Position numbers and translations under genes: made by a program
Part shown: positions 2,668-56,409 of the stretch, piece by piece
Layout of the letters: each line of letters begins with the position of its first letter
Numbering within the stretch: the stretch's first letter is position 1
Virus record (IMG/VR): IMGVR_UViG_3300025133_009608
Span: 62,001-126,000 of that record
Direction: 5' to 3' (one strand)
DNA: 64,000 bases
The notes under the pieces: model-generated
Seen by the model: the letters and a program-made list of their open reading frames with translations, nothing else
Told to the model about the DNA's origin: nothing
The model's database searches: none

Positions 2668-4314
2668 TTAATATTTGTGATTTAAATTGCCATTTTGTGG
2701 CGGGCGCCATCCGGCCGGAGGCTGCCAGCTCGATGGGTCATCTGGGGCCTCTGATACTATCGATTCTGTATTTAGAAGCAATAACGCTATACTTGATGCA
2801 TTCTCAACCGCAGTTCTGGTAACCTTCTTCGGGTCCAGCACTCCCGCATCAAACATGTCTGCGTATGTATTGGTTGCGGCATTATACCCAAAATTTATAT
2901 TGTCAGACTCAAGAATCTTTGAGATGATAGGCTCTGGGTCTATAAATCCATTCTTTAAAATTTGAGAAATTGGTCTGGCACATGATTTTATCAAAACCTC
3001 TGCGGCAGGCCTAAGCCTCTCGTCTATCTCAGATAAATCAATCATATTTGCAGCACGAAGCATCGCAACTCCACCACCAGGGACCACTCCCTCCTCTATT
3101 GCCGCCAAGGTTGCACTAAGAGCGTCATCCATTCGGTCGCCCTTCTCTCTGAGTTCGAGTTCCGTGCTGTAACCCACTGTTATTACAGCTGCGCGACTAT
3201 TCAAAAATGAAAGCCTCTTTTTCAAATCGATTCTTTCGGAATCCCCCAGTAAGATGTCTTGATCTCGCTTATATTGCTCTATCTTCTTTGAGACTCTATC
3301 TGAATCTTTTTCTCCATCAATTATTTTTGTTGTCGATTTCCCAACAACCACTTGCTTGGCAAGTCCCAAATCCGAAGCCTTCATATCCCTGAGCAAGGCG
3401 CCCGACTTGGGGCTGCAAATATTTGTACCAACCAACATGCTGAGATCATCTAGCCAGTCGGCCTGAGAGGGCCCCATGGTAGGAATCTCTACCGCCACCA
3501 CTTTTAGTCGGCCGAGCTTGTTATTCGCGACCAACGTGGATAGAGCCTCCTGTTTTATTGCCCTAGCAAGAAGCAGCAGCGGCTTATTGTCATTTGACAG
3601 GCTATTAAGCATTGCCATGCAATCCGTTAAGTGCGTTACTTCTCTGTCCACAATGAGAACATTACAATTCTCCATAACAATGCTTCCGCGGTTATTATCC
3701 GCCAAAAATGCAGGAGTAACATATCCAGTTTTAAGCTCTACCCCATCCACAATTCTAACCGTAGTTTCTCCGCCGGGAGACGCCTCTGCCGTTACTGTTC
3801 CGGAGAACCCGACCGAATCGAATGCCTCTGCAATCTTCCCTCCCAAGAGGTGGTCGTTATTTGCAGATATAGTGGCAATGCTTTTTACCATATCATGTCC
3901 GTTAGTTTGAATAGATATGCTATCTAAGTTTTTTGAAATCTGCTCTACAGCCCAAGTAAGCCCATCTCTAAAATCAAGCGGGCTATAGCCCGACTCCATA
4001 AGGACTGCCCCTCTGGAGATAATTTCATGAGCCATTACTGTTGCGGTTGTGGTTCCGTCTCCTGCGATATCTGCGGTTCTTCCTGCAACTTCTTTTACAA
4101 GCTGGCAGGCCAAGTCTTCCACCGGATCTCTTAGCACAACCTCTCTTGCGACAGATACGCCATCCTTTGTAACTACTGGAGCTCCAACAAACTTGCCGAT
4201 GACGACGTTTCTTCCTTGAGGTCCCATCGTAACCGCGACAACGCTTGCTAACTTCTCCACCCCAGACAAAATCTTATCTCTTGCCGCTGTGGAGTGCAAA
4301 ATATCTTTAGCCAT
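2668..4314 (-). CDS. groEL: Chaperonin GroEL/Cpn60-like, copy 1 (divergent)
   Basis: VTMGPQGRNV, VTKDGVSVA, AGDGTTTATV, ISANND, EEGVVPGGG, GVLDPKKVTR. Atypical Pro/Trp C-tail with no GGM repeats. Confidence 0.93.
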   Translation of the reverse strand: MAKDILHSTAARDKILSGVEKLASVVAVTMGPQGRNVVIGKFVGAPVVTKDGVSVAREVVLRDPVEDLACQLVKEVAGRTADIAGDGTTTATVMAHEIISRGAVLMESGYSPLDFRDGLTWAVEQISKNLDSISIQTNGHDMVKSIATISANNDHLLGGKIAEAFDSVGFSGTVTAEASPGGETTVRIVDGVELKTGYVTPAFLADNNRGSIVMENCNVLIVDREVTHLTDCMAMLNSLSNDNKPLLLLARAIKQEALSTLVANNKLGRLKVVAVEIPTMGPSQADWLDDLSMLVGTNICSPKSGALLRDMKASDLGLAKQVVVGKSTTKIIDGEKDSDRVSKKIEQYKRDQDILLGDSERIDLKKRLSFLNSRAAVITVGYSTELELREKGDRMDDALSATLAAIEEGVVPGGGVAMLRAANMIDLSEIDERLRPAAEVLIKSCARPISQILKNGFIDPEPIISKILESDNINFGYNAATNTYADMFDAGVLDPKKVTRTAVENASSIALLLLNTESIVSEAPDDPSSWQPPAGWRPPQNGNLNHKY

Positions 4315-4849
4315 TATTGTTTTCCTTATAAATGTGAGTTAATGCAACTGCTATTGCATCTGCTTCGTCTAAGCATTGCTTTGCAAGGTTGCCCGCTCTA
4401 TTCTCGCGGACTTCAAATCCAGAAACACTTCCAACGATAAAGTCAAACGCTTCTTCTTTTGAAGATACCTTTTTCCCGCCCATCTTTGATAAGCACGATC
4501 TAATTGTCGATACTGCGTATTTATGCGGCTCTATAGATGCCTCGCGAAGACACGCCATGGATATTACCTCATTGAATACAGATAATACTATTATTGTTCT
4601 TGCGGTACTTCTTCCTGCGCTAAACTTTGAAGCATAAGCTTCAATCACAACGGAATCTGGAGTCCTGCTCCCGAGAAGTTCCGCCACCATATCATATGCG
4701 GCACTTGCGCGAAAAGCAATAGAACCCTTTGGCTTTCCGGGAGGTCTAAGGTGTCCATAATCAATTAGCTCCCCCTCTCCGTTATTGTCCCGAAGGAGCG
4801 CCCAGCCTATTACTGACGATGATATATCCAGCCCAAGAATCGTATCCAA
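4307..4849 (-). CDS. RuvC-like Holliday junction resolvase (start revised to TTG at 4849)
   Basis: ILGLDISSSVIGWALL, VVIEAY and DEADAIAVA give the RNase H-fold acidic residues. GGAG lies 7 nt upstream of TTG 4849; the ORF-track ATG at 4888 lies inside a terminator hairpin. Confidence 0.8.
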   Translation of the reverse strand: MDTILGLDISSSVIGWALLRDNNGEGELIDYGHLRPPGKPKGSIAFRASAAYDMVAELLGSRTPDSVVIEAYASKFSAGRSTARTIIVLSVFNEVISMACLREASIEPHKYAVSTIRSCLSKMGGKKVSSKEEAFDFIVGSVSGFEVRENRAGNLAKQCLDEADAIAVALTHIYKENNNG

Positions 4850-4860
4850 TTCGAAACTCC

Positions 4861-4908
4861 AAATAAAAGAGCCGAGGAGCCCAACCATAGCATGTTAAGC
4901 TCCTCGGC
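4861..4908 (-). terminator. Rho-independent terminator after the SSB gene
   Basis: Perfect 10-bp inverted repeat GCCGAGGAGC (4871-4880 / 4899-4908) followed on the minus strand by TCTTTTATTT. Confidence 0.75.
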
Positions 4909-4919
4909 CTGACTGCATC

Positions 4920-5540: not shown

Positions 5541-5552
5541 TCTCCTGTTTAT

Positions 5553-5569
5553 TGTGAGATTATCTCACA
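5553..5569. promoter_or_regulatory. 17-bp palindrome TGTGAGAT-T-ATCTCACA just upstream of the SSB RBS
   Basis: Perfect 8-bp inverted repeat around one base, ending 6 nt before the AGGAG. Confidence 0.45.
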
Positions 5570-5627
5570 TTTGTTATTGGCACTATTGTTGCGTTATTAC
5601 AAACTTATGGCCACATTGTTTGAAGGA

Positions 5628-6528: not shown

Positions 6529-7013
6529 TAGTCAGAAACTCTCCGAACCGAGGCTCCTGCCTTTCTCATTCCCTTTGACTCATTTGCAAGGCGCTTTAAT
6601 CTAGCCACTCTCAAGTCTTCGCTCTCCTCTTTGGACAGCTCCGGCATAGATTCTATGGCCTCTGCTCTAATTTGCCCTCTAATATCATCTTCGGGAGGCA
6701 GAGCCTCATCTGGGGAGCCCTCCGTTACGCTGGAAGCCGCCTCAGAGTCCTCTGGCGAGGCAGCAGGAGGCTTGGTCGCCTCATCTGTCGGCAAAAAATA
6801 CTCCGAAAGAATAAACAATGACATATCAAATATTATATCCTTCGAAAGGCCGCTTGCAAAGTCTTGATTCTTTATCTTCTCGGATAAAAATGAAAGCCTT
6901 TGCATGTATGCTTCCCCCAAAAGAGCCTGGCCGCAACTTGGGCAGCAATTATTTACCAAAGAATATCGCATTCCATTGGAAACATCAAACCCACACCCTC
7001 TACACTCGATCAT
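6528..7013 (-). CDS. Hypothetical protein with N-terminal Zn ribbon
   Basis: CRGC...CCPSCG; start overlaps the dnaE stop. Confidence 0.6.
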   Translation of the reverse strand: MIECRGCGFDVSNGMRYSLVNNCCPSCGQALLGEAYMQRLSFLSEKIKNQDFASGLSKDIIFDMSLFILSEYFLPTDEATKPPAASPEDSEAASSVTEGSPDEALPPEDDIRGQIRAEAIESMPELSKEESEDLRVARLKRLANESKGMRKAGASVRRVSD

Positions 7014-10000
7014 AGTCTACTCCCATATACTCTCTCGAGATGAGAGAGGGCTAAATCTTTTTTGTCCATATACTCATTCACCTTGCAGACTGCCTTAAGA
7101 GGGGATCCGTCCTTTAAAATATCTCTATATCTAGAGTAGTCATCAGCCCAGACTGTCATGCCACAGGTTTGGCCAGTAACATCTTCTATAAGATATTTTG
7201 CAAACTTCTTCCCCGCATTCTTTCCATTCTTTATCTTAAATTCTTTTACCTTGGCCTTGATAATGGCCTCAACTCTAACGGAATCACCCTTATTCATAAG
7301 GGGGATTCTTACAAACTTTAGAACATTCGGGCCAGAGGAAAAGAAGTCAGAAAAAACCTCATGTAGATTTCCGCTAATAGCACGACCCAATACTGCCTGT
7401 TCACCTAAAAGCACTTCTTTTCTCTCCCATTCGTCGGAATGATAAGCATCAATTTTGATTTCGCCAATACTTTTTCCCTTTTTCAGTTCAGAATTTGTTT
7501 TTGTTCTATATTTTTGATAATTATCATGCATATCCATTCGAGTTTTGCCGAACTCATCCATGGCGCCGGCCCTTGCTAGCGACTGAATTACGATCTTCCC
7601 GACAGTTCTGGAGTTATTCTTCGTGACAAACTCTTCGAACGATGCGAATGGCTGGCTTTCTAAAATTGACTCTATAGCCTTATCTCCAACGCCCTTGAGG
7701 GCTGCGAGTCCAGTAATAATATTTCCGTTAACAATATTATATTTACCCCCACTTTTATTTACATCCGGCGGAAGAATTTTGATCCCAAGAGACCCACAAC
7801 TATCTATATATTCCTGAACTGCGTCACTATTCTGATCTTCTGAGTTTATCAGGGCACACATAAACTCTGCCGGATAATGACACCTTAGCCATGCGGTATA
7901 ATATGAAATATGAGAATAAGAAATTGAATGACTTTTATTAAACGAATACCCCTGCAATACTTCTATATAATCTCTAAAGACTTCACATGCCATCTTGTGA
8001 GTCATTCCGGAATACTTCATGGAGTCTTTTATAAAATCAGACTGTACCTTCATCGCTAAGGCGGGATCTTTGCCTTTTAATTTGCTTAATTTTCTCAATG
8101 AGTCTGCCTGGTTTAGATCCCACCCTGCAACGTCTTGTGCTATAAACATTGCTTGCTCTTCATAGACCAAAATTCCGAAGGTACTCTTTAATGCTCTTTC
8201 TAAATTTGGATGCTCTATTTTAAAGTCTTCTCTTCCAAGTTTTCTTCTGATATATTTCGCCCTAGACTCAGCCTTACATGACGGCCTTCCGATTGCATTG
8301 ATGTCAGATATCTCGGATATGCTTCTTGGCTTAAGCTTTATGCACAATGGAGTTAAAGATGATTCAAGCTGAAAAACACCAGAAGTACCGCCCCTTCCTA
8401 TCATGTTGTACACCTTATCGTCGTCCAGTGGAATGTTCTCGATAGATATCGACTCACCGGTTGTCCCGAAGATCAGAGAAAGAGCTTCATCCATAACGGT
8501 CAAAGTCTTTAATCCCAAGAGATCCATTTTTATTAAACCATTCTCCTCGCACCTGCTCTTCTCCCACTGAGTAACCGTGTTCCCTTTGTCATCTAACCTT
8601 AGAGGTACGAAACTATATAATGGCTCATTTCCAATGACGACCCCAGCGGCATGAACGCTCCAGTTCCTTGTTAGATTTTGTAATTTTGATGTGTACTCGT
8701 ATAACTCTGGATACTCCTGCATATATGCTGCTACATGCTTTGAGTCGCGAACTGCCTCATCAATAGTTTTCGAATCTGGCATATTTTGAGTAATTAAATT
8801 TGCAATCTTAAACGCCGTAGACTTGTCCCCGCCCAACCGAAGGCTTCTGGCGCAATCTTTTATTGCGACCTTCGGAGATAGCTTTCCCCAGTTAGAAATA
8901 GAGGCAACCTTTGAGGGCCCATACTTATCCTTTAGATACTCCTTTACATCTCCGGGGCGAGAGAAGTCGGTATCTATATCTGGAAATGATGTTTTTTGGT
9001 TATTGTGAAATCTCTCAAAGATTAAATCGTACTTAATTGGATCAATCCCAGTAATTCCAGTAAGATATGCAACCATAGAACCGGCAGAGCTTCCTCTCGC
9101 CGTTCCAACGGGCATTCTCTTTTTTGCCCAATTTATATAATCAGCAACAATAAGCATATAAGAAGAAAAATCTTTCTCTTCCAGAACATCTAGCTCCACC
9201 TTTACTCGCTCCCAGTATGCGGCCTTATCTTCTTTTGACAAAGACCCCAACTTGCTCTTAAATCCCTCAATACATTTGTACCTGAGGTATTCCTTATCTT
9301 CTACTCCGATTAGGCTCTTGCTCTCTTTCCATTTTAAAAACTTTTGATAATCTGAGGAGTCACTAACGGGGTAGCTAGGCAGCTGGGGGCCTTTTGCTCT
9401 CAAATAGTTTGGATACTCACAAGCATTCATTATTTTCATGGAGTTTTCCATGCCAACTTTTGATATTTCACTTCCGAAAAAATCCGTTATTTCATCCTCG
9501 GCCTTTAGGTACATATCCTGAACGCCATATTTGAACCTCGTCGGGTCGTCAAGAGCTTTTTTGTCTTTGATTGCCAACATAAAGTCATGATACTTTGCGT
9601 GCTCTGCATCCCTATAGTGCGCATCACAGGTTATTACATATGGTATATCCATATCGTGGGACAAGCGAACTAATGCCTGATTCAGCATTGGCTGGCTGAT
9701 TGGCTTTCCATCCTTTGTAGTAACGTCAAGAGCATGTGGCTGAATTTCTAGAAAAAATCCATCTTGAAATATAGAATTAAATCTATTTAAATATTGGACC
9801 GCAAGCTCTTCGTTCTGCTCCGTAATCAGAGTTCTCGCTATCAGCCCAGAAGGGCAAGCAGTCAGCGCAATTATATCCTTATTATACTTTTCAATATGCT
9901 CCCAGGTTATGCGCGGAGTCTTCTTCCCCATATAGCCAGAAACTTGATTTCTAAAGCCAAGATAATTAAGCCTAAGGATATTTTGATATCCCAGCTGAGT

Positions 10001-10270
10001 CCTTGGCAGCATTATCATATGATAAGATCTGCGCTCGGCTGGATCGTTAGAAAAATAGAACTCACACCCAGGAATGAGTTTTACCCCGGTTTTTTCAGAT
10101 GCCTTAAACGCATCATAATGGGCAGTCAAAGTTCCATGATCTGTTATCGCAAGCCCCGGATGGCCGACCTCTTTCGCTCTCTCAAAGATATCATAAACAC
10201 CGTTCATTCCGTCTAACGGGCTGCCAAGCTCTGTGTGATTATGAAGAGAAACAAATTTTCCATTGGCCAT
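7010..10270 (-). CDS. dnaE: DNA polymerase III alpha subunit (C-family)
   Basis: PHP domain (LHNHTELGSPLDG, ITDHG, GCEFY, TCDAHY), ARGSSAGSMVAY, FERF, PDIDTDF, HAAGV, KMDLLGL, YEEQAM, YSFNKSH and a C-terminal OB fold. Confidence 0.97.
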   Translation of the reverse strand: MANGKFVSLHNHTELGSPLDGMNGVYDIFERAKEVGHPGLAITDHGTLTAHYDAFKASEKTGVKLIPGCEFYFSNDPAERRSYHMIMLPRTQLGYQNILRLNYLGFRNQVSGYMGKKTPRITWEHIEKYNKDIIALTACPSGLIARTLITEQNEELAVQYLNRFNSIFQDGFFLEIQPHALDVTTKDGKPISQPMLNQALVRLSHDMDIPYVITCDAHYRDAEHAKYHDFMLAIKDKKALDDPTRFKYGVQDMYLKAEDEITDFFGSEISKVGMENSMKIMNACEYPNYLRAKGPQLPSYPVSDSSDYQKFLKWKESKSLIGVEDKEYLRYKCIEGFKSKLGSLSKEDKAAYWERVKVELDVLEEKDFSSYMLIVADYINWAKKRMPVGTARGSSAGSMVAYLTGITGIDPIKYDLIFERFHNNQKTSFPDIDTDFSRPGDVKEYLKDKYGPSKVASISNWGKLSPKVAIKDCARSLRLGGDKSTAFKIANLITQNMPDSKTIDEAVRDSKHVAAYMQEYPELYEYTSKLQNLTRNWSVHAAGVVIGNEPLYSFVPLRLDDKGNTVTQWEKSRCEENGLIKMDLLGLKTLTVMDEALSLIFGTTGESISIENIPLDDDKVYNMIGRGGTSGVFQLESSLTPLCIKLKPRSISEISDINAIGRPSCKAESRAKYIRRKLGREDFKIEHPNLERALKSTFGILVYEEQAMFIAQDVAGWDLNQADSLRKLSKLKGKDPALAMKVQSDFIKDSMKYSGMTHKMACEVFRDYIEVLQGYSFNKSHSISYSHISYYTAWLRCHYPAEFMCALINSEDQNSDAVQEYIDSCGSLGIKILPPDVNKSGGKYNIVNGNIITGLAALKGVGDKAIESILESQPFASFEEFVTKNNSRTVGKIVIQSLARAGAMDEFGKTRMDMHDNYQKYRTKTNSELKKGKSIGEIKIDAYHSDEWERKEVLLGEQAVLGRAISGNLHEVFSDFFSSGPNVLKFVRIPLMNKGDSVRVEAIIKAKVKEFKIKNGKNAGKKFAKYLIEDVTGQTCGMTVWADDYSRYRDILKDGSPLKAVCKVNEYMDKKDLALSHLERVYGSRL

Positions 10271-18740: not shown

Positions 18741-19571
18741 TCAGTCCCTATTGAGTATTTCCGCTATTAAGCGCTTGGTTCTTGGCTTCTTTCCAAGCTT
18801 TTTAAGCTTTATACTCGCAGCCCATCCAGTTATTCCGACCTTATCCGCAGCATCCTTTAGGGATAGATCGTATAAGCAGATTAATTCTAAAATCTTCGCG
18901 GTCTTTGGATCAATAGAATCAGTTAATGAACGCAAGGATCTTTGAAACTCCATCATCTGCAGAGAGGTTCTTTTGTCCCCATAAATAGAAGCATCCGCGT
19001 CTATACTGTCTTGAAAGAACTCTCCGTACTCGTCGCCGCTCTTATTCTTTTTTGGATTTATCTGAGAAAATGATATTTCTCCGCGTGATTTTCTAAAAAG
19101 AGCCTTATGCTCCTTTCCGCACGAATCACATATGCCCAAAATATCACTATTTGGATCATTAGACTTTAGAATCTCACCGTCACAATCGCAAAGTATATTT
19201 CCATTTTTTGACTTTAATGAAAATGCATCATTTGAAAGTTTATTTATACTTCTTATTTTTGATACCAACTTGTTTCTAAGATGAATATGCAAGAAGGTAC
19301 TAAGCTTTACTTTCTTTTCGGGGTCAAAGGCCTTGATCCCCTCGATTGCTAATATTACTAGCTCTTGCTTTATGTCTTCAAATCTAAATCCAGGCATATG
19401 TGTTCTAGACGCCATCTTGCACAAAAGCGGATCTATCTTCTTTAAGACCGCTCCATAGCCCTCGCCCGAAATAGTATCTACATATATCTCCTCATTATAC
19501 ATTCTGACTACACCAGAATAACTCTTCATTAACTTCTCCGGCCTTGCTTGTGGCTTAAATAATTGTATCAA
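18741..19571 (-). CDS. Phage sigma-70-family RNA polymerase sigma factor with a Cys4 insertion
   Basis: Region 2: FEDIKQELVILAIEGIKAFDPEKKVKLSTFLHIHLRN. Region 4: ILELICLYDLSLKDAADKVGITGWAASIKLKK. C-x-C-x17-C-x2-C lies between them. Confidence 0.8.
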   Translation of the reverse strand: MIQLFKPQARPEKLMKSYSGVVRMYNEEIYVDTISGEGYGAVLKKIDPLLCKMASRTHMPGFRFEDIKQELVILAIEGIKAFDPEKKVKLSTFLHIHLRNKLVSKIRSINKLSNDAFSLKSKNGNILCDCDGEILKSNDPNSDILGICDSCGKEHKALFRKSRGEISFSQINPKKNKSGDEYGEFFQDSIDADASIYGDKRTSLQMMEFQRSLRSLTDSIDPKTAKILELICLYDLSLKDAADKVGITGWAASIKLKKLGKKPRTKRLIAEILNRD

Positions 19572-24816: not shown

Positions 24817-24819
24817 TAA

Positions 24820-35571: not shown

Positions 35572-36108
35572 TTATTTCTCCGTAATCTTTATGTTTGTTG
35601 TATGAGCCGGCTCCGAATGTGGAACTATCAACTCTAGTAATCCATTTTTCATTACCGCCCTTGCCTTGGCGGGGTCAAATGCTGGACTCATAAAAAACTT
35701 TGCCTTAAAACTTCTTCTGGCAATCCCTCTTACGATCATCCCCTGCTGTATTTGTAGGTTTGGATTTTTCGCAGGGTAATCATCCGAAGTCTCGTCGAGA
35801 TCGGCTTCTTCGGCCAAAACTTCGGGCTCCTTCAGTTCAGACCTTACTCCACTACCTGATACAAACAGCTCTCTTCCAGAGGCCTCTATTCGTATATCCT
35901 CTGGGGAATATCCGGCAAGTGCGAAGGCCATATGAAAGCCGTCGGCATCACACCACTGATCTGATTTCGGAAACCTTCCCGAAGTTGACGCCTTCTTAAG
36001 AGAAGAAACCTCTCTATAAAAGGAATCATCGGACCACAATAAGTCCATTATTCTTCCTGGAATGGAAACTCTATTTAACAAGTCCTTCATATTATTGGCT
36101 CCGCTCAT
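35572..36108 (-). CDS. Small heat-shock protein (Hsp20/alpha-crystallin family)
   Basis: FALAGYSPEDIRIE...LFVSG, RGIARRSFK..F, A.MKNGLLELIVP. Confidence 0.85.
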   Translation of the reverse strand: MSGANNMKDLLNRVSIPGRIMDLLWSDDSFYREVSSLKKASTSGRFPKSDQWCDADGFHMAFALAGYSPEDIRIEASGRELFVSGSGVRSELKEPEVLAEEADLDETSDDYPAKNPNLQIQQGMIVRGIARRSFKAKFFMSPAFDPAKARAVMKNGLLELIVPHSEPAHTTNIKITEK

Positions 36109-47481: not shown

Positions 47482-50400
47482 CTATCGGAGACGTCTGGCG
47501 AGATTAGTCTCTCCCAAGCCGTTTAATATGGCCGCGATGATACATGTGTTTGCTATCTTACCAAGAGTCTCTGTCCGGTCCGGGATGGGCGAATATTCGC
47601 CATTAGTTGTGGAAAAAAAATAGACCCCAAACCTTCCAAGGAGATAGTTTCCAAGCAGATCCCTGGCCGCTTGGACATATTCTGTAGGCTCGGGCGAGTT
47701 GTCTAATAAAACCTTTTTTAATCCTCCCCCGTCATTCCGAAACGCTCTTCCAGATAGATCGACGGAAGTGTTCGGGCTACTTATAGAATAAATATCACCG
47801 GGACCATTTCCTGTTTGATTGGAAATTAGATTACTGATGGTCCTGGTAGTAATCAACTCATTTACTTTGGCCTGAATTTCGGCCCCTTGATTCTGGCTAG
47901 CACGCGCAGCCGCTTGCTGCTGAGTCGGGGCGTTCGTGGGGGTTCTGCCGCTGAGTCCTGAAATGGATGTGCCAGCACCATTAGCAGCAGCAGCAGTATC
48001 CATATCCATAATCATTTTCTTTATATCGTTTTTAATTGCAGTATTCTCCATCCAAAGATCGACGAACCTTACGGTGCCTCCCGCGCTTCTCTTATATCTT
48101 CCAAATACATACATTCCATAAGGTTCTTCTCCATGCTTACTCCATAGGGAATCAAGATGGGAGCTGAGATTCGCGCTTCCAATTGCGTCCTTTGCCGACT
48201 CCCAAGCGTTATTTAATGCCGAATAACTGGGCAAGTTATCCGGCCACTCTTGGTCGCGGCTCCCAAAGAAGTTTCTAATAATATCGTCAGTTACACTCGC
48301 TTCCCTTTGGGTGTTCTCGACGGATGCATAAGGATCAAGTCGCACCCCACTAGCCTGCTGTGATTCGCTCATTTGATCAATGGTACTTTTCAGGCGAGAA
48401 AGAGCTGCTTCCGGACCGGATGAGGATTCCCAAGACTCAGCGTAACTTGCATCATTCCTCATTCTTGTAAAAAAAGGATCATGGGAAGCTGGAACGTATC
48501 CAGGATTGTTTTTAAAAGAATCATGAGCCGCTACCCAAAAATTATACCAAGCCGTCTGTGTATTTGAACCCCAATCATCGTCGATATTACCGGTGTAGTA
48601 TCGACCGGTTTGTAGTTCTGTTTGTATCTTTCCAATATTGCCGTTTGCGGCGGTTTGCCGTGGCTGCGGCGAATAATTAGGAAAGGGATTTACATTTCCG
48701 TTTGCTGAGGCGCCACCTGAGCCGCCTCTGGGGCCACCTCCTCTGGAGGCTCCAGCGGGTGGGGATTGACCGATGGGTTGCGCCGTCTTATCTAATGAAT
48801 CCTTTTTTTTTGATCTGCTCGATATTGCCCTTAGGGCCACATGATCATCTGCAAACGACTCCAGCATCCATGTAGCAGCGGACCCTGCTTTTGATAGCCA
48901 CCTTCCATTCATCTTAATCCAGAGTTTTCCTTCGTCGCTGGCATCGTCAATCGGCCCCGTTTGATCAGCATCAATATCGTCCTTCCAGGTATAATCTCTC
49001 AAAGGAATAACTATGCCCCTGCTTTGACGAGCTTGGGCTATGGTGTTGAGCGAGCGGAAAAAAAGCACTCTAGTATTTTCCGAATCAAATACGTGGTGGG
49101 CTCCACTATCATAGACTATGTGCGACACCATTTCTGGGTTTAGAATAAAGGGAGATTCGTCAAGATTTCCTTCGACTATTTCAAAATTGGTATCGCCCAC
49201 GGTTTTTGTATTATTTGCCCGGCTGGTGACTGCGACTGGAGCATAACCTCTATCATAAGCAGACTTGAGAGCTTCCAGGGTGTCCTTAGCACCTGCGTAG
49301 TAAGGAGCAGACTGACTCCCCGGATTAGTGCCGGTCCCGAATAAAAAATCGTTTAATTCAGTAACATCGTCATCCGAGCCCCCATGAGCAAGGTCTTGTG
49401 TTTGTTGCTCGAAGCTCTGTCTAAATAATGGAAAGGTGGATAAACTGCCGCGATTGTAGGCTCTTTTTATGCTCCTTATTATTACATCAAAAGTTGTTGC
49501 GTCCGTACTCTGAAATAGGTTGTCGTCGTCCTCTTTGATTGCAAGTCTCGCCGCGTCAAGAAAGCTGCCCATGGCACTGAAAATAGGATCACCTGTTGCC
49601 ATCTTTCTAATCATATTTGATCGAAGTAATGAAAGTCTCTCCAGCCGAGCATTATGGATATCATAAGCATGGCGCAACCCTTCGGCCGCAGCACGCGCAT
49701 CGTTGTAGAAAGGAGCAGATTGACGCCCCGGATTATTGCCGGTCCTGAATAAAAAATCGTTTAATTCAGTAACATCGTCATCCGAGCCCCCTTGAGCAAG
49801 GCCTTGTGTTTGTTGCTCGAAGCTCTGTTTAAATAATGGAAAGGTGGATAAATTGCCGCGATTGTACCGATCTAATAATACACGCTCAATTGATTCAAAG
49901 GCCGTGAAGTCACGGCCCTGAAATAGGTTGTCGTCGTCCTCGTTAATTGCTCTTTTTGTTGCCGCCAAAAAAGCCCGCATGGCAGGCCGAATAGTGTCAG
50001 GAGTATTCTTCTCCGGTTTGGCGGCCAAGTCATCAGGGGTATTCTGCGGAGCCTGCACAGGACCATGGAGGTCGCCCGTATAGGCCATCTTTCTAATCAT
50101 ATTTGATTGAGCGGCATACCCGGAGTTATTTAAAGCCAAAGCTAATTTCTTTAATTCATTATTCATTTTACTTTCCCTTGATGTAACAACCCTTGATTCA
50201 TCGCCGAAGCCCAGCCACGAAAAGAAGTCTTTCTCAGATTTATCTTTATTATTAGTAGGATTTCCAAGAACATTATACTCGGAAGTTCCGGAATCTTTTC
50301 TTTGAATATTAACGGGAGGTTGATCCTCCGGCAAATCCATTGGCGATGACTTTCCGAAGCCCGAAGAATCCGAAGCCTCTTGATCGCCATCTCCATAATT

Positions 50401-50640
50401 TATAACTTGCTTTTCAATTGCGCCGGGAACAGATCCAATCGGCATACTGGTAAGTCCTATTGCCTCTTTTACGTTTCTGGCCTTAATTCTTTCTGTCAAA
50501 GTTTTGCCCGATTGCTCCGCATCGAATTCGTGCTCGTCGGGATCTGACATGGGATAATTAACCTCTTCATTTCTTCTATTTAATGTTGGCATGTTTTCGG
50601 AGATTGGTGCCAAGTCCAATATAGAAATTTCTTTATCCAT
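47482..50640 (-). CDS. 1052-aa mosaic protein with an internal duplicated domain and a peptidoglycan-binding-like motif; possibly virion-associated
   Basis: Two copies of DDDNLFQ...YNRG.LSTFPLF.QSFEQQTQ.LA.GGSDDDVTELNDFLF; IQTELQTGRYYTGNIDDDWGSNTQTAW resembles PG_binding_1; ELKKLALALNNSG and SNMIRKMA motifs. Confidence 0.65.
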   Translation of the reverse strand: MDKEISILDLAPISENMPTLNRRNEEVNYPMSDPDEHEFDAEQSGKTLTERIKARNVKEAIGLTSMPIGSVPGAIEKQVINYGDGDQEASDSSGFGKSSPMDLPEDQPPVNIQRKDSGTSEYNVLGNPTNNKDKSEKDFFSWLGFGDESRVVTSRESKMNNELKKLALALNNSGYAAQSNMIRKMAYTGDLHGPVQAPQNTPDDLAAKPEKNTPDTIRPAMRAFLAATKRAINEDDDNLFQGRDFTAFESIERVLLDRYNRGNLSTFPLFKQSFEQQTQGLAQGGSDDDVTELNDFLFRTGNNPGRQSAPFYNDARAAAEGLRHAYDIHNARLERLSLLRSNMIRKMATGDPIFSAMGSFLDAARLAIKEDDDNLFQSTDATTFDVIIRSIKRAYNRGSLSTFPLFRQSFEQQTQDLAHGGSDDDVTELNDFLFGTGTNPGSQSAPYYAGAKDTLEALKSAYDRGYAPVAVTSRANNTKTVGDTNFEIVEGNLDESPFILNPEMVSHIVYDSGAHHVFDSENTRVLFFRSLNTIAQARQSRGIVIPLRDYTWKDDIDADQTGPIDDASDEGKLWIKMNGRWLSKAGSAATWMLESFADDHVALRAISSRSKKKDSLDKTAQPIGQSPPAGASRGGGPRGGSGGASANGNVNPFPNYSPQPRQTAANGNIGKIQTELQTGRYYTGNIDDDWGSNTQTAWYNFWVAAHDSFKNNPGYVPASHDPFFTRMRNDASYAESWESSSGPEAALSRLKSTIDQMSESQQASGVRLDPYASVENTQREASVTDDIIRNFFGSRDQEWPDNLPSYSALNNAWESAKDAIGSANLSSHLDSLWSKHGEEPYGMYVFGRYKRSAGGTVRFVDLWMENTAIKNDIKKMIMDMDTAAAANGAGTSISGLSGRTPTNAPTQQQAAARASQNQGAEIQAKVNELITTRTISNLISNQTGNGPGDIYSISSPNTSVDLSGRAFRNDGGGLKKVLLDNSPEPTEYVQAARDLLGNYLLGRFGVYFFSTTNGEYSPIPDRTETLGKIANTCIIAAILNGLGETNLARRLR
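49300..49990. repeat. Intragenic duplication with 408-bp period, plus a 23-bp exact repeat
   Basis: AATAAAAAATCGTTTAATTCAGTAACATCGTCATCCGAGCCCCC at 49340 and 49748; GCCATCTTTCTAATCATATTTGA at 49598 and 50084. Confidence 0.85.
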
Positions 50641-53254: not shown

Positions 53255-53291
53255 AATTAATTCATTTCACAATTCAGCGATGAATATTAGC

Positions 53292-53325: not shown

Positions 53326-53343
53326 GCTTAAAATTGCTTAACT

Positions 53344-53655
53344 TTATTCTTCATCTAGATCAACATGGAGTGCCAAAAACTTATACAAAGAGTCAGAATC
53401 TGTAACCTTCAAGTCCTTTGGAACCTTTTTATATCCCAAGATCATCATTTTTACATCTTGCTCTTCGTAGTCCTTCTCAATGCTGCCTCGTTTTACCGCC
53501 ATTATAGAGCCATCGAAGCTAAGCTTTAAGTTCTCCATTACTGATTCATCCAAGATTTCTTCCTTAAACATATTTTTATGCAAAGGGGTTACTAACCAAG
53601 CGTATTCACTCATCGTCCGGTCCTCCATCTTCGTGCTCTTCCATTCTTCTCTCAA
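53344..53655 (-). CDS. Hypothetical protein (likely start MSEYAW)
   Basis: Co-oriented ORF; the internal ATG overlaps the stop of the 53606 gene. Confidence 0.5.
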   Translation of the reverse strand: MREEWKSTKMEDRTMSEYAWLVTPLHKNMFKEEILDESVMENLKLSFDGSIMAVKRGSIEKDYEEQDVKMMILGYKKVPKDLKVTDSDSLYKFLALHVDLDEE

Positions 53656-54466
53656 TAATTACTTTTGCAGAATAATATTCCGTTCCCATAATTGATGTCA
53701 AAAGGTGTATCGGAAGGCTCTTTGCCAATGTCGTCTGAACCCATTCATGCTTGGAGTCTGAAAACTTTAAAAGAAGATTCTCATACCTTCCTTTATACAA
53801 ATCCCTATGCTTAATAAGAGTCTCAAGTCCAGCATTTGATGCCTCTTCTGAGGCTTCGGACCGAATCTTTCTGGCCTCCTTTTCTGACAAAACCCCGGCG
53901 CTTATATAATGCCTATAAAGAAACCCGCGAACTCTATATCCAAACGAAACCTTGGTCGCCTTATCAAATAAGGCCGAGCGAACAAATAACGGAATAGTGC
54001 TCTCATCCTGCTTTGCCACCCCAGAGGCTATGCTTTCTAATATTCTAGATACATACGAAGTCCTTTCTGCTCTTTTCATTTCCTGAAAAAACAGCGGCTT
54101 CCAATCAAACTTTGGATTCAATCGGGCTGCCGACAAATAAATTGAATCGGAATTCCTAGCGATATGAGTTAGCTTTGTTTCCCCATATTCACATAATTCT
54201 TTAAAATTCGATAGATCGTCGATTATACTTGCCCAAAAAGGTGACTCGTTATATATGTCAACCCCGCCATTAACGAGGCTGGTCATTATTGCCTGTCTCG
54301 CACTTTCTGACAAGTCACTATAATACGGCTCCATTAGATGGAGATTGTTGGAGATAGTTCTCCGCGCAGCCTTGGCCACTTCAGATCTATCATAGGTATA
54401 ATGATTTGGCCGAAACAAACTATCCGTACCATACTTAATGAAAAAGTCTTTTATTTCCTTATTCAT
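53606..54466 (-). CDS. Helical-repeat (HEAT-like) family protein C
   Basis: ENLLLKFSDSKHEWVQTTLAKSLPIHLLTSIMG, similar to the 43309 gene. Confidence 0.55.
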   Translation of the reverse strand: MNKEIKDFFIKYGTDSLFRPNHYTYDRSEVAKAARRTISNNLHLMEPYYSDLSESARQAIMTSLVNGGVDIYNESPFWASIIDDLSNFKELCEYGETKLTHIARNSDSIYLSAARLNPKFDWKPLFFQEMKRAERTSYVSRILESIASGVAKQDESTIPLFVRSALFDKATKVSFGYRVRGFLYRHYISAGVLSEKEARKIRSEASEEASNAGLETLIKHRDLYKGRYENLLLKFSDSKHEWVQTTLAKSLPIHLLTSIMGTEYYSAKVIIERRMEEHEDGGPDDE

Positions 54467-54740
54467 TACAAAGACTCCCCATCAATCTTGTGAATTCTTC
54501 GAGATTCTCATTCAGAATGGAAATCTTAACCGCATCATTCAGAAGCCCCCAGAGCGGCGCGATGTCTTTGAGCGGAAGCCTGGCGAAGCGCACAACATAC
54601 TCTTTTTCATCCCCGCTATAGGAATTAGAGCAAGAGTTGATTCCCTTTGCTATTAGATAATTATATACTTGCTCTACTTCGATCTCAGGAGATTGCTCGT
54701 CCTCTCCCTCAATAAGCCTAATTGATTCTATATTGCTCAT
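54459..54740 (-). CDS. Hypothetical protein
   Basis: AAGGA RBS; first gene after conserved element copy 3. Confidence 0.55.
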   Translation of the reverse strand: MSNIESIRLIEGEDEQSPEIEVEQVYNYLIAKGINSCSNSYSGDEKEYVVRFARLPLKDIAPLWGLLNDAVKISILNENLEEFTRLMGSLCNE

Positions 54741-54774
54741 TCTATATTCCTTTTTTCGATAGGTTCACTGAGGT

Positions 54775-54803
54775 ATAATAAATCGAGATTATTTATATCA
54801 AAA
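54775..54803 (-). promoter_or_regulatory. Conserved 29-bp element, copy 3
   Basis: ATAATAAATCGAGATTATTTATATCAAAA (consensus). Confidence 0.8.
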
Positions 54804-54807
54804 CTTT

Positions 54808-56409
54808 CTATTCCTTGATATCTTCATCATAAATAGCGACTTCAGTAGTTAGAAGTGTTCCGCTGGCAGATGCGGCATGTTCCACTGCCGACCTTACAAC
54901 TTTCACCGGATCAATAACTCCGGACTTTATCATATCTGACTGAAAAGAATTCGTCAGAGCATTATATCCGCAAGTTGTATTTTTTGAGTTTATAATTTTC
55001 TGCATAAACTCATAAGGCTCTACTCCGGCATTGGTCAAGATCTGCTTAAACGGAGCACAAATTGCACGAGATACTATTCCAACTCCAACCGCCTCCTCTG
55101 CAGATAAAGAAGAATCTTTTAATAATTTTTTCAACTCCGGGACGCAATGCAACAGAGCAGCTCCCCCTCCTGGGACGATCCCCTCTTGAATCGCCGCCTG
55201 AACAGCATTTATCGAATCCTCCACTCGATCCTTTCTTTCTCTCATCTCCGCCTCTGACATTCCGCCAACCCTAAGTACCGCAACTGCCCCAGACAGCGTT
55301 GAGAGCCTATGCCGAAGAGATGCAGCCTGATGAGGGAACAGGTCAGAGCTTTCAAGCTGAGACTTTATACCTAGAATCCTAGTCTCCACATCAGCGGAGT
55401 CTCCGCCGCCATCTATTATGGTTGTCTTGTTTCTTGAAATAATTACTTTTCTTGCCGTTCCAAGATCCGAAAGCGATACGCTCCTAAGAGCATTTCCCCC
55501 CTCATTTGTCAGCATTCTCCCGCCACAAATTGTGGCAATATCACCTAACATTTCTGCTCGAATATCTCCAAAGCCAGGAGCCTTCACGGGACAGGAGTCA
55601 AGAGTTCCTCGGGCCTTATTTAAAACAAGAGTCTGCAAGGCCTCTGAGTTTACATCTTTTGCTATAATTACTACTGGCTTCGACGCTTCAGACGCGGCCT
55701 GTAATACAGACAAAAACTCCTGACTAGAAGTAAGGGCATCATCGTATGTAATAATAAATGGATTATCAAACTCAACTGTGAGCTTCTCTTGATTCGTAGA
55801 GAATGCAGGAGAAATATATCCCCTGTCGAATGATAGACCTTCAGTATAAGAGGTCGTTGTTTCTGAGCCAGCCGCCTCTTCTACGGAGATAATTCCATCA
55901 TCCCCAACCGTTGTCACTACCTCTGCGATTAGAGAGCCCAATTCGATATCATTATTCGCAGATATAATTGCAACATCTCTGACCGTATCCGTTCCAGAAA
56001 CCTCTGATGAAATATCTTTCAAAAAAGAGACGACAGTGCTTACTGCTATGTCTATTCCTCTTTTTATCAAAACTGGATTATGCCCAGCGGCAACCATCTT
56101 AGCTCCCTCGGTATAAATCGACTGAGCTAATATGGTTGCCGTTGTTGTTCCGTCACCGGCAACAGAGTTTGTTGATGAGGCAACTGATTTTATGAGCTGA
56201 GCACCCATGTTTTCTATCTTATCCGAAAGACTTATAGAACGAGCAACAGTCACCCCGTCCTTTGTAACCAAAGGGGGGCCGTAAGACCTGTCAATGGCGG
56301 CGTGCCTACCTTTTGGACCTAGAGTTACCTTGACAGCGTTTGCCAAAATATCTAATCCGATTTGCATTCCGCTTCTTGCATCAAGGCCTATCTTTACTTC
56401 TTTGCTCAT
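54808..56409 (-). CDS. groEL: Chaperonin GroEL/Cpn60-like, copy 2 (divergent)
   Basis: KVTLGPKGR, VTKDGVTVA, AGDGTTTATIL, ISANND, FDRGYISP, VKAPGFGD, EGIVPGGG, GVIDPVKV; no GGM tail. Confidence 0.93.
   Translation of the reverse strand: MSKEVKIGLDARSGMQIGLDILANAVKVTLGPKGRHAAIDRSYGPPLVTKDGVTVARSISLSDKIENMGAQLIKSVASSTNSVAGDGTTTATILAQSIYTEGAKMVAAGHNPVLIKRGIDIAVSTVVSFLKDISSEVSGTDTVRDVAIISANNDIELGSLIAEVVTTVGDDGIISVEEAAGSETTTSYTEGLSFDRGYISPAFSTNQEKLTVEFDNPFIITYDDALTSSQEFLSVLQAASEASKPVVIIAKDVNSEALQTLVLNKARGTLDSCPVKAPGFGDIRAEMLGDIATICGGRMLTNEGGNALRSVSLSDLGTARKVIISRNKTTIIDGGGDSADVETRILGIKSQLESSDLFPHQAASLRHRLSTLSGAVAVLRVGGMSEAEMRERKDRVEDSINAVQAAIQEGIVPGGGAALLHCVPELKKLLKDSSLSAEEAVGVGIVSRAICAPFKQILTNAGVEPYEFMQKIINSKNTTCGYNALTNSFQSDMIKSGVIDPVKVVRSAVEHAASASGTLLTTEVAIYDEDIKE

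What the first reader, a model, noticed from the sequence alone, without database searches (positions are those of the whole stretch)
2668..56409. Two divergent GroEL paralogues with no GroES in the window
Seen: both keep GDGTTT and the catalytic Asp (MDDAL, VEDSI) but differ strongly from each other. Both lack the GGM tail, and both have Ala at the E. coli Y203 position (GYVTPAF and GYISPAF versus GYLSPYF). At inter-ring R452/E461, copy 1 reads S/D and copy 2 reads K/E by eye alignment. Neither has an adjacent groES. Established: some phage chaperonins work without a co-chaperonin or as single rings. Inference: a hetero-oligomeric or stage-specific pair, with one copy among replication genes and the other beside the putative virion-protein cluster.
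Basis: partly seen in the sequence, partly recalled or inferred. Interest (0 to 1): 0.64.

Follow-up and report, generated by a model that had tools for sequence, protein, structure and literature searches.

The report
Two GroELs, no GroES, jumbo phage
An uncultured marine jumbo phage and all of its sufficiently long relatives carry two old, very different copies of the protein-folding machine GroEL but no gene for its usual lid (GroES), which suggests that a whole phage lineage runs two specialised, probably lid-free chaperonins.

Summary
Window 2668-4314(-) and 54808-56409(-) encode two full-length group I chaperonins that are 37% identical, in a 316.7-kb marine virus record (CheckV 94%). 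No GroES or T4 gp31-type gene was found in the record or in 15 related records. In contrast, 10 of 10 other GroEL-bearing viral records at least 60% complete have one.

The pair is not an assembly artefact. Nine related IMG/VR records hold both copies, 38-61 kb apart, in the same gene neighbourhoods. Each copy defines its own large clade (100/100 support). Neither nests in a bacterial phylum.

Both clades keep the ATPase core. Both lose residues that are near-invariant in bacterial GroEL and kept in the other viral GroELs sampled (aromatic or His at 203, G375, cavity-wall acids). Most divergence is in the apical domain.

Copy 1 sits in a conserved ruvC-groEL-recA block. It lacks R197 and carries a conserved, disordered Trp/Pro-rich C-terminal tail. 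Copy 2 is more GroEL-like and is always followed by a small helical protein that is not GroES-like.

Best reading: two specialised homo-oligomeric chaperonins working without a phage lid. Mixed rings, use of host GroES, and the claimed 'virion cluster' next to copy 2 all remain untested or unsupported. This is a new variant of a known kind.

The parts
2668..4314 (-). Copy 1 (GroEL-1), 548 aa. A derived group I chaperonin.
   Evidence: Pfam PF00118 E 5.9e-55. About 40% identical to bacterial GroEL. AF2 model has a GroEL fold, pLDDT 83.6. Its clade has more than 120 clusters at 90% identity and is monophyletic at 100/100. The ATPase core is invariant, while R197, G374/G375, Y203, E252, E255 and K226 are replaced clade-wide.
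2671..2754 (-). Conserved C-terminal tail of copy 1 (residues 521-548, consensus ..PSSWQPPAGWRPPeeGnLNHKY). It replaces the GGM repeats.
   Evidence: Q531, P533, R537, P539, H546 and K547 are invariant in 20 diverse members. The profile over 119 members is. The tail is predicted disordered, pLDDT below 50. A DNA pattern made from this motif retrieved 41 IMG/VR records, and 42 of the 44 records then searched hold a Cpn60.
54808..56409 (-). Copy 2 (GroEL-2), 533 aa. The more GroEL-like paralogue, with a short, acidic, non-conserved tail.
   Evidence: Pfam PF00118 E 1e-69. About 50% identical to bacterial GroELs of many phyla. Its clade has about 75 clusters and is monophyletic at 100/100. It keeps R197, K105/A109 and R268 but loses Y203, G375, E363 and D83.
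54459..54740 (-). 93-aa ORF immediately downstream of copy 2, conserved in position in all relatives. It is helical, not GroES-like.
   Evidence: A homologue of 74-108 aa lies 44-98 nt after copy 2 in 10 of 10 related loci. The AF2 model is a 5-helix bundle, pLDDT 83.5. No Pfam or PHROG hit. No PDB fold match.
53606..54466 (-). 286-aa ORF, the second member of the conserved cassette after copy 2 (KTARKIRSD motif). Function unknown.
   Evidence: Homologues are present in the same position in 10 of 10 related loci. No family hit.
53344..53655 (-). 103-aa ORF, the third member of the conserved cassette after copy 2. Function unknown.
   Evidence: Conserved in 10 of 10 related loci. No family hit.
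4307..4888 (-). RuvC-like resolvase. Its 3' end overlaps the start of copy 1 by 8 nt.
   Evidence: Pfam RuvC E 6.2e-7. It lies upstream of copy 1 in 15 of 15 related loci.
1488..2654 (-). RecA-family recombinase, 13 nt downstream of copy 1.
   Evidence: Pfam RecA E 1.5e-51. It lies downstream of copy 1 in 15 of 15 related loci.
4870..4909 (-). Strong hairpin (16-bp stem, 9 G-C pairs) followed by a T-rich tail, just before ruvC. A possible transcription-unit boundary ahead of ruvC-groEL1-recA.
   Evidence: Terminator-like scan. This is a consensus match only, and its function is inferred.
387..1130 (-). DnaG-type primase (Toprim), in the same co-directional block as copy 1.
   Evidence: Pfam Toprim_2 E 5e-18 and DNAG_N E 6.2e-16. 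Conserved in 15 of 15 loci.
7010..10270 (-). DnaE-type DNA polymerase III alpha, upstream in the same block as copy 1.
   Evidence: Pfam DNA_pol3_alpha E 1.5e-70, plus PHP, finger and HHH_6 domains.
35572..36108 (-). Hsp20-family small heat-shock protein, the third chaperone gene of the phage, lying between the two GroELs.
   Evidence: PHROG Hsp20 E 8e-9. Pfam HSP20 above its cut-off at the same place in the six-frame search.

Best explanation
The window belongs to an uncultured marine jumbo phage of about 317 kb. Its lineage has kept two anciently diverged group I chaperonin genes, and no GroES- or gp31-type co-chaperonin gene was detected in it.

Shown:
- Both proteins are full-length GroEL homologues with an intact ATP-hydrolysis site.
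- Each belongs to its own large clade, found only on long environmental contigs and viral records.
- The two genes sit in fixed, different neighbourhoods about 40-60 kb apart in every related record that is long enough.
- No Cpn10 gene was detected in the lineage, although most other GroEL-bearing viral records sampled have one.

Inferred:
- The two copies assemble into two separate, functionally specialised homo-oligomeric machines.
- Copy 2 stays closer to canonical GroEL. It keeps R197, K105/A109, R268 and about half of the conserved apical positions. It acts as the more general folding or holding chaperonin.
- Copy 1 is co-directional and nearly contiguous with ruvC and recA. It has lost the R197 inter-subunit salt bridge, both hinge-2 glycines and both inter-ring contact sites. 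The charge of its cavity wall is reversed (E252K, E255K, K226E). It has gained a conserved, disordered Trp/Pro-rich C-terminal tail. It is a derived chaperonin with a narrower client set or a different ring architecture, probably a single ring.
- Both clades have lost features tied to the GroES-capped cis cavity and kept by the other viral GroELs sampled (G375, an aromatic residue or His at 203, cavity-wall acids). They therefore most likely work without an encapsulating lid. This would be an ATP-driven bind-and-release or aggregation-prevention mode, like that shown for phage EL gp146.
- Use of host GroES remains possible, mainly for copy 2.
For: Identity of the genes:
- Pfam, PDB and alignment results agree that both are group I chaperonins.
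- T30, K51, D52, D87-T91, D398, G416 and D495 are 100% conserved in the 119 copy-1 and 73 copy-2 clade members.
- The AF2 model of copy 1 has a GroEL fold.

Conservation of the pair:
- G002, G003, G004, G006, G008, G010, G021, G037 and G044 each hold two Cpn60 genes 38-61 kb apart. Records with only one copy are too short on the relevant side.
- Synteny holds in 15 of 15 loci for copy 1 and 10 of 10 for copy 2.
- Within-genome identity between the copies is a constant 35-39%. Orthologue identities are 53.7% for copy 1 and 58.8% for copy 2.
- Each clade has 100/100 support. Neither lies inside a bacterial phylum, whereas Vibrio and Bacteroides phage GroELs nest within the phylum of their hosts.

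No co-chaperonin gene detected:
- None in the window's own record.
- None at E<=1 in 15 related records.
- By contrast, 25 of 44 other GroEL-bearing IMG/VR records have Cpn10, including 10 of 10 that are at least 60% complete.
- The conserved 93-aa neighbour of copy 2 is a helical bundle, not a beta-barrel.

Loss of lid and cavity features:
- Y203 is 99% in bacteria. It is A/S/N in copy 1 and T/A/L in copy 2.
- G375 is 100% in bacteria and in 43 of 43 other viral GroELs. It is K in copy 1 and S/A in copy 2.
- E252, E255, E363, D253 and D359 are lost or charge-reversed.
- Of 95 apical positions conserved in bacteria, copy 1 keeps 23 and copy 2 keeps 45. Of 115 equatorial positions they keep 70 and 87.
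- 21 residues that are at least 95% conserved in bacteria are lost in both clades, against 11.8 expected by chance (p 5.5e-4).

Precedent:
- Phage EL gp146 hydrolyses ATP, does not bind GroES and prevents aggregation without encapsulation (PMC7185714).
Against: - The hydrophobic helix H/I groove (Y199, F204, L234, L237, L259, V263) is kept in both clades. This groove binds both substrates and the GroES mobile loop, so host GroES could still dock. The host is unknown.
- Oligomeric state, ring number and lid independence are read from residues only.
- Strict co-occurrence of the two genes would equally fit an obligate mixed ring.
- The record is 94% complete by estimate, and every related record is a fragment. 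A co-chaperonin that is very divergent or of another fold could have been missed.
- Both proteins are far closer to GroEL (about 40-50% identity) than to EL gp146 (E 1e-27 for copy 1). The EL analogy is functional, not phylogenetic.
Confidence: 0.5

Rival explanations
1. The two paralogues co-assemble into one hetero-oligomeric chaperonin with mixed rings, as in chloroplast Cpn60 alpha/beta. Both genes are then obligatory parts of a single machine.
For: - The two genes co-occur in every record long enough to show both.
- Divergence of the two copies across genomes is tightly correlated (r 0.95).
- Copy 1 has lost R197 but keeps its partner E386 at 100%, while copy 2 keeps R197. A copy 2 to copy 1 interface could therefore still form that salt bridge.
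Against: - The correlation is expected from shared phylogeny alone.
- The genes lie about 50 kb apart in different conserved cassettes, not in one operon.
- The two copies differ at many ring-contact positions.
Confidence: 0.2
2. Both copies, or at least copy 2, are conventional GroES-dependent GroELs that borrow the host's GroES. The phage then needs no lid gene of its own. The two copies would differ mainly in timing or client range.
For: - The hydrophobic GroES- and substrate-binding groove is retained in both clades. N265 and T261 are also retained, and copy 2 keeps R268 and R197.
- Copy 2 is about 50% identical to bacterial GroELs.
- Bacterial hosts almost always encode a GroES. The Cpn10 control search hit 12 of the 14 control genomes, 3 of which are archaea.
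Against: - Other viral GroELs usually bring their own GroES: 10 of 10 records at least 60% complete.
- Those other viral GroELs keep G375, E238 and an aromatic residue or His at 203. Both clades here have lost G375 and Y203, and they have lost the acidic cavity wall that encapsulated folding uses.
- The apical domain is the least conserved domain in both clades, whereas it is the most conserved domain in bacteria.
Confidence: 0.3
3. A phage co-factor of a different fold replaces GroES. The candidate is the conserved 93-aa helical protein just downstream of copy 2, or the cassette that follows it.
For: - The small ORF follows copy 2 at 44-98 nt in 10 of 10 relatives. It is in the size range of co-chaperonins.
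- It folds confidently (pLDDT 83.5) and has a disordered acidic N-terminus.
Against: - It has no resemblance to GroES or gp31, which are beta-barrels with a mobile loop.
- It has no family or fold match.
- Adjacency alone is weak evidence for binding.
Confidence: 0.1
4. Artefact: a chimeric assembly or bacterial contamination placed a second GroEL on the contig.
For: The record is a linear metagenome assembly without terminal repeats.
Against: - Nine further IMG/VR records hold the same two-copy arrangement with the same neighbours.
- Composition and strand bias are uniform across the window.
- A 49-kb IMG/VR record encodes a copy 1 identical in amino-acid sequence. A third marine run holds 91% of the sampled words of the copy-1 region.
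- Neither copy nests within a bacterial phylum.
Confidence: 0.02

Closest known systems
Bacterial GroEL (group I chaperonin, E. coli GroEL/GroES)
   Same: - Full-length homology (Pfam Cpn60_TCP1).
- About 40% identity for copy 1 and about 50% for copy 2.
- An identical ATPase site.
- The three-domain fold.
- A retained hydrophobic apical groove.
   Different: - No groES in the genome.
- Y203, G375 and the cavity-wall acids are lost in both copies.
- Copy 1 also loses R197, K105/A109 and G374.
- No GGM tail.
- The apical domain is the least conserved domain rather than the most conserved.
Multiple GroEL paralogues in bacteria and organelles (for example mycobacterial Cpn60.1/60.2, cyanobacterial GroEL1/2, chloroplast Cpn60 alpha/beta). 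The examples are from my own knowledge. Lund 2009 is cited in PMC5649160.
   Same: - Two diverged paralogues are kept in one genome.
- One sits away from any groES.
- One copy has an altered C-terminal tail.
- Sub-functionalisation or mixed rings are the usual explanations.
   Different: - Here the genome is a phage.
- Neither copy is linked to a groES.
- None of the 258 and 287 deposited phage records that match copy 1 or copy 2 has a second GroEL locus.
Co-chaperonin-independent phage chaperonins: Pseudomonas phage EL gp146 (PMC7185714). OBP gp246 and AR9 gp228 are added from my own knowledge.
   Same: - A phage-encoded GroEL homologue with no phage GroES.
- EL hydrolyses ATP, ignores GroES, splits into single rings and prevents aggregation without encapsulation. 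That is the mode proposed here.
   Different: - EL gp146 is only distantly related (E 1e-27 to copy 1, against 1e-116 for E. coli GroEL).
- Those phages have one chaperonin, not two.
- Both proteins here are much closer to GroEL.
Virioplankton GroES-GroEL cassettes (Marine et al. 2017, PMC5649160) and GroEL-bearing isolates such as Flavobacterium phage immuto and the Bacteroides DAC phages
   Same: Marine and other phages carrying group I chaperonins. Many of these also lack GGM tails.
   Different: - Those phages typically carry an adjacent GroES.
- They have a single GroEL.
- They keep G375 and an aromatic residue or His at 203.

Membership tests
Group I chaperonin (Cpn60/GroEL, PF00118) | Full-length match to the family profile above its curated threshold | tested here: met
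   Copy 1 scores 187.3 bits and copy 2 scores 236 bits against a cut-off of 34.3. The matches cover profile positions 1-488 and 1-485 of 490.
Group I chaperonin (Cpn60/GroEL, PF00118) | ATP/Mg site: GDGTTT loop (D87-T91), T30, K51, D52, catalytic D398, G415/G416, D495 | tested here: met
   All are present in both proteins. All are 93-100% conserved across 119 and 73 clade members.
Group I chaperonin (Cpn60/GroEL, PF00118) | Equatorial, intermediate and apical domain fold | tested here: met
   The AF2 model of copy 1 has pLDDT 83.6, and its secondary-structure order matches GroEL. Copy 2 aligns end to end with solved GroELs. Copy 2 was not folded.
Group I chaperonin (Cpn60/GroEL, PF00118) | Works with a Cpn10 (GroES) lid, usually encoded next to it | tested here: not met
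   No Cpn10, phrog_3188 or phrog_931 match in the record or in 15 relatives. Whether host GroES is used cannot be tested here.
Group I chaperonin (Cpn60/GroEL, PF00118) | Back-to-back heptameric double ring held by R452-E461-S463-V464 and K105-A109 contacts | tested here: inconclusive
   R452, S463 and V464 are not conserved in either clade. K105/A109 are kept in copy 2 (93% and 89%) and lost in copy 1. The oligomeric state itself is not testable with these tools.
Group I chaperonin (Cpn60/GroEL, PF00118) | C-terminal Gly-Gly-Met repeat tail. Common but not universal. | tested here: not met
   Copy 1 has a conserved SWQPPAGWRPP..LNHKY tail. Copy 2 has a short acidic tail.
Lid-independent phage chaperonins (EL gp146 type) | Sequence membership in the EL/OBP/AR9 chaperonin group | tested here: not met
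   EL gp146 (PDB 6tmt) matches copy 1 only at E 1.1e-27 over residues 7-422, far weaker than bacterial GroELs. It is not among the 60 rows shown for copy 2.
Lid-independent phage chaperonins (EL gp146 type) | ATPase and chaperone activity without GroES, and nucleotide-driven dissociation into single rings | not testable with these tools
   This needs purified protein. Only indirect residue evidence is available.
Hetero-oligomeric paralogue chaperonins (chloroplast Cpn60 alpha/beta type) | Obligate co-occurrence of the paralogues | tested here: met
   Both copies are present in the window's own record and in 9 of 9 related records long enough to show both.
Hetero-oligomeric paralogue chaperonins (chloroplast Cpn60 alpha/beta type) | Physical co-assembly in one ring | not testable with these tools
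   Two full-length subunits (1081 residues) exceed the 1000-residue limit of the complex predictor. The equatorial domain is not a contiguous stretch, so it could not be cut out.

The most novel reading that the evidence does not exclude
A widespread lineage of marine jumbo phages runs a GroES-free, two-chaperonin system that has no described counterpart in viruses.
- One paralogue is wired into the recombination and replication operon. It carries a conserved Trp/Pro-rich C-terminal peptide in place of the GGM tail. This peptide could act as a built-in cavity element or a docking element.
- The other paralogue works with a new helical accessory protein encoded directly downstream.
- Alternatively, the two paralogues form the first known viral hetero-oligomeric group I chaperonin.
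Probability: 0.2. Interest if true: 0.75.

Novelty: new variant of a known kind. Interest (0 to 1): 0.55.

Why it matters
Phage GroELs are rare model systems for asking how a chaperonin can work without its lid. Only single-copy, highly divergent examples, such as EL gp146, have been studied.

Here a whole, apparently abundant marine jumbo-phage lineage keeps two GroEL-like proteins that are still 40-50% identical to E. coli GroEL. Both have shed the same set of lid and cavity features. That makes a natural, alignable pair of intermediates between canonical GroEL and lidless phage chaperonins.

The finding also gives three concrete handles for experiments:
- the R197 and hinge-glycine losses in copy 1;
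- the charge-reversed cavity wall of copy 1;
- the invariant C-terminal peptide of copy 1.

It further suggests that very large phages partition protein-folding help between genome modules. One chaperonin sits inside a ruvC-recA-primase block. A second sits in its own conserved cassette. An Hsp20 gene lies between them.

Tried and rejected
1. A canonical or T4-type co-chaperonin hidden elsewhere in the genome. Four independent searches of all six frames found none. Scans of 142 small ORFs against Pfam and PHROGs showed no Cpn10-type family among the 25 families listed.

2. The 93-aa ORF after copy 2 as a disguised GroES. Its model is a 5-helix bundle with no PDB match.

3. A complex prediction of copy 2 with that ORF gave no verdict (score 0.00). 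This is not evidence for or against binding.

4. Deciding between a duplication within the phage lineage and two separate acquisitions.
- The careful tree leaves the position of the two clades relative to bacteria unresolved. Bacteria fall on one side of a branch with support of only 42/37 and in 44% of bootstrap trees.
- Only two shared derived identical residues were found (241S, 407I).
- The bacterial sample lacked several phyla.

5. Finding a cultured relative or a host. DnaE is at most 34% identical to any deposited phage. The nearest bacterial GroELs are spread over many phyla at about 50% identity.

6. Placing the virion module next to copy 2.
- No virion-family match was found among its neighbours.
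- Sheath and terminase Pfam searches of the genome were blank.
- The 'portal' PHROG hit is non-specific, because it also hits all 14 control genomes.

7. Homologues of the 93-aa ORF by word search. Only the ORF itself was found.

8. Expression data. No RNA run holds the stretch.

9. Literature. No paper describing two GroEL genes in one phage was found.

Full report
**What is there**

The window is bases 62,001-126,000 of a 316,664-bp IMG/VR virus record that CheckV estimates as 94% complete. Nearly all genes lie on the minus strand, and GC content is even at 41-46%.

Two ORFs encode full-length group I chaperonins:
- Copy 1 is at 2668-4314(-), 548 aa.
- Copy 2 is at 54808-56409(-), 533 aa.

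Both match Pfam Cpn60_TCP1 end to end. Both find bacterial and mitochondrial GroEL/Hsp60 structures as their best solved relatives. The E-value to E. coli GroEL is about 1e-116 for copy 1 and about 1e-143 for copy 2. The two copies are 37% identical to each other. A six-frame search finds exactly these two Cpn60 genes in the record.

I aligned both copies to Salmonella GroEL, taken from a record in the phage collection. It has the same numbering as E. coli GroEL. Both copies have GDGTTT, D52, D87 and D398. Both have Ala at Y203. R452/E461 read S/D in copy 1 and K/E in copy 2. Neither has a GGM tail.

**No co-chaperonin**

Four searches of the record found nothing:
- Pfam Cpn10 in six frames at E<=1.
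- tblastn with Salmonella GroES at E<=10.
- The PHROG GroES family at E<=1.
- The PHROG family of T4 gp31 at E<=1.

I identified those two PHROG families by scanning T4 gp31 and three GroES proteins. The control genomes were hit as expected. None of 15 related viral records, about 1.6 Mb in total, has a Cpn10 match at E<=1.

This absence is unusual among viruses. Of 44 other GroEL-bearing IMG/VR records, 25 have Cpn10. All 10 that are at least 60% complete have one. The three records of this lineage at that completeness have none. These are the window's own record at 94%, G006 at 66% and G010 at 68%.

**The pair is a lineage feature, not an artefact**

Close relatives of copy 2 (61-65% identity) lie on IMG/VR fragments. 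Three of these also hold a copy-1 gene about 50-56 kb away.

A DNA pattern derived from the conserved tail of copy 1 retrieved 41 IMG/VR records. Among these and three further related records, every record that extends far enough on the upstream side has two Cpn60 genes 38-61 kb apart. These are G002, G003, G004, G006, G008, G010, G021, G037 and G044. Single-copy records are short or end too close to the gene.

In the large protein collection, copy 1 has more than 120 clusters at 52-85% identity. Copy 2 has about 75 clusters at 53-86%, after which ordinary bacterial GroELs follow at about 50%. Many of the longest contig lengths, such as 314,860, 345,675, 252,157 and 209,818, appear in both lists. 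Several entries come from Tara and other marine data. Public marine metagenome runs hold the copy-1 region.

By contrast, none of the 258 and 287 deposited phage records that match copy 1 or copy 2 has a second GroEL locus. Only 1 of the 44 other IMG/VR records does (G062).

**Gene neighbourhoods**

Copy 1 lies in a block that is conserved in 15 of 15 related loci. The order is DnaE, four small ORFs, RuvC, copy 1, RecA, a zinc-ribbon ORF and a DnaG-type primase. The start of copy 1 overlaps the end of ruvC by 8 nt, and recA starts 13 nt after copy 1. A strong hairpin precedes ruvC.

Copy 2 is followed in 10 of 10 relatives by three ORFs of unknown function:
- a 74-108-aa ORF;
- an ORF of about 300 aa with a KTARKIRSD motif;
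- an ORF of about 90 aa.

The rest of the window is mostly DNA metabolism. It includes SbcCD, an FtsK-like protein, a PD-(D/E)XK nuclease, sigma-like proteins and adenylosuccinate synthetase, together with several very large ORFs that have no family match. No neighbour of copy 2 matches a virion family convincingly. An Hsp20 gene lies between the two GroELs. No Hsp70 or DnaJ was found.

**Phylogeny**

In both a quick 89-row tree and a careful 52-row tree (LG+C20+F+G4), each copy forms its own clade with full support and a long stem. Neither lies within a bacterial phylum. Vibrio phage GroELs group with Gammaproteobacteria, and the Bacteroides phage and LR756501 GroELs group with Bacteroidales.

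Whether the two clades are sisters is unresolved. The branch that would place them together against bacteria has support of 42/37 and appears in 44% of bootstrap trees.

Within-genome identity between the copies is 35-39% in all seven genomes compared. Orthologues average 53.7% for copy 1 and 58.8% for copy 2, and copy 1 is the more diverged in 20 of 21 genome pairs. The split therefore predates the radiation of the lineage, both copies are under purifying selection, and there is no sign of gene conversion.

**What has changed in the proteins**

I compared 119 copy-1 sequences, 73 copy-2 sequences and 124 bacterial sequences. The nucleotide site is invariant in all three groups.

Changes shared by both clades:

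| Position | Bacteria | Copy 1 clade | Copy 2 clade |
|---|---|---|---|
| Y203 | Y 99% | A/S/N | T/A/L |
| G375 | G 100% | K | S/A |
| E252 | E 99% | K 86-87% | Q/K/R |
| E363 | E 100% | L/K/I | A 86% |

D253, D359 and R452 also become variable in both clades.

Changes specific to copy 1:
- R197 (100% in bacteria) becomes S/N/A.
- G374 becomes N/S.
- K105/A109 become variable.
- E255 becomes K and K226 becomes E.
- A383 becomes Y in 100% of members.
- R268 becomes L/I, and position 270 (G/T/S in bacteria, Ile in E. coli) becomes R.

Copy 2 keeps R197, K105, A109 and R268.

Retention of positions that are at least 90% conserved in bacteria:

| Domain | Conserved in bacteria | Kept in copy 1 | Kept in copy 2 |
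|---|---|---|---|
| Equatorial | 115 | 70 | 87 |
| Intermediate | 43 | 24 | 27 |
| Apical | 95 | 23 | 45 |

The apical domain is the most conserved domain in bacteria but the least conserved in both phage clades.

Twenty-one residues that are at least 95% conserved in bacteria are lost in both clades, against 11.8 expected if the losses were independent (p 5.5e-4). Most are apical.

The other viral GroELs sampled keep G375 (43 of 43), E238 and an aromatic residue or His at 203, whether or not a GroES was found on their contig. Many of them also lack GGM tails. The missing GGM tail is therefore not special, but the loss of G375 and Y203 is.

Copy 1 ends in a tail with the consensus PSSWQPPAGWRPPeeGnLNHKY. 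It has six invariant residues in 20 diverse members and is predicted to be disordered. The tail of copy 2 is short and not conserved.

**The small ORF after copy 2**

Its position and size prompted a test for a disguised co-chaperonin. An AF2 model built from 11 homologues is a five-helix bundle with pLDDT 83.5, unlike the beta-barrel of GroES and gp31. It has no significant PDB fold match and no Pfam or PHROG match. A complex prediction with copy 2 returned no verdict and is not used as evidence.

**Interpretation**

Shown: two ATPase-competent GroEL paralogues, kept together and in fixed contexts across a diverse marine jumbo-phage lineage, with no recognisable co-chaperonin gene.

Inferred: they act as two specialised machines rather than as redundant copies. 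The features lost in both copies have three known roles in E. coli GroEL (from my own knowledge of GroEL biochemistry):
- the large apical movement (hinge glycines 374/375);
- binding of GroES and polypeptide (Y203);
- folding inside the closed, negatively charged cis cavity (E252, D253, E255, D359, E363 and the GGM tails).

The lack of any Cpn10 gene in the lineage and the relaxed apical domain point the same way. The most economical reading is a lid-free, ATP-driven bind-and-release or aggregation-prevention mode. This mode was shown experimentally for the much more distant phage EL gp146 (PMC7185714).

Copy 1 has additionally lost both inter-ring contact sites and the R197 salt bridge, and it has gained a conserved tail. 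It is the more derived protein, perhaps a single ring. Its tight embedding between ruvC and recA suggests clients among the replication and recombination proteins, but that is conjecture.

Use of host GroES cannot be excluded, because the hydrophobic groove is intact. It is more likely for copy 2. A mixed ring cannot be excluded either.

**Comparison with what is known, and novelty**

The following are all known:
- multiple GroEL paralogues in bacteria and organelles;
- phage GroELs with a GroES (Marine et al. 2017, PMC5649160);
- GroES-less single phage chaperonins.

I found no description of a conserved pair of GroEL paralogues in a phage lineage. No deposited phage genome has two GroEL loci. 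I therefore rate this a new variant of a known kind. It is of moderate interest, mainly as a natural pair of GroEL-like proteins that appear to have shed the lid-dependent cycle.

**Limits**

All related records are fragments. The host is unknown. Oligomeric state, GroES binding, clients and expression timing were not measurable here.

Noticed in passing
window 35572-36108 (-): An Hsp20-family small heat-shock protein gene lies between the two GroELs. The phage therefore carries three chaperone genes. No Hsp70 or DnaJ was found in the record.
   Followed up: partly
window 56433-56687 (-): An 84-aa ORF directly upstream of copy 2 has an N-terminal hydrophobic segment and about four tandem copies of TTGTTESS. 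A homologue was seen in only one related locus.
   Followed up: no
G000 outside the window (small ORFs listed): The phage encodes NifU-like and IscA-like iron-sulphur cluster assembly proteins. It also encodes an HU-like DNA-binding protein, NUDIX hydrolases, a SET domain protein, cupin / cysteine-dioxygenase-like proteins and a MotA/ExbB-family protein. Their coordinates were not resolved.
   Followed up: no
window 10726-17376 (-), 28496-31999 (-), 32009-34342 (-), 47482-50640 (-): Four very large ORFs (2216, 1167, 777 and 1052 aa) have no Pfam or PHROG match at all.
   Followed up: partly
IMG/VR record G062 (202,778 bp): C1:44040-45536 and C1:134041-135231: An unrelated viral record also has two Cpn60 matches. 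The second is weak (95 bits, profile positions 1-383). This record has a GroES next to the first copy. It may be a second, independent case of a duplicated viral chaperonin.
   Followed up: no
window 2-382 (-) and 18741-19571 (-): Two sigma-70-like fragments are present, one matching region 4 and one matching region 2. This suggests the phage brings its own transcription specificity factors, so sigma-70 promoter scans are of little use here.
   Followed up: no
window 21289-27621 (-): SbcC-like, SbcD-like and FtsK/SpoIIIE-like genes lie together downstream of the replication block.
   Followed up: no
phage collection records OR848861.1, PQ520251.1, OR844996.1, AFYI01000007.1: Several records filed as phages carry ordinary host groES-groEL operons (Listeria, Enterococcus, Staphylococcus, Salmonella). 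They look like bacterial contigs or contamination. I used them here only as bacterial reference sequences.
   Followed up: partly
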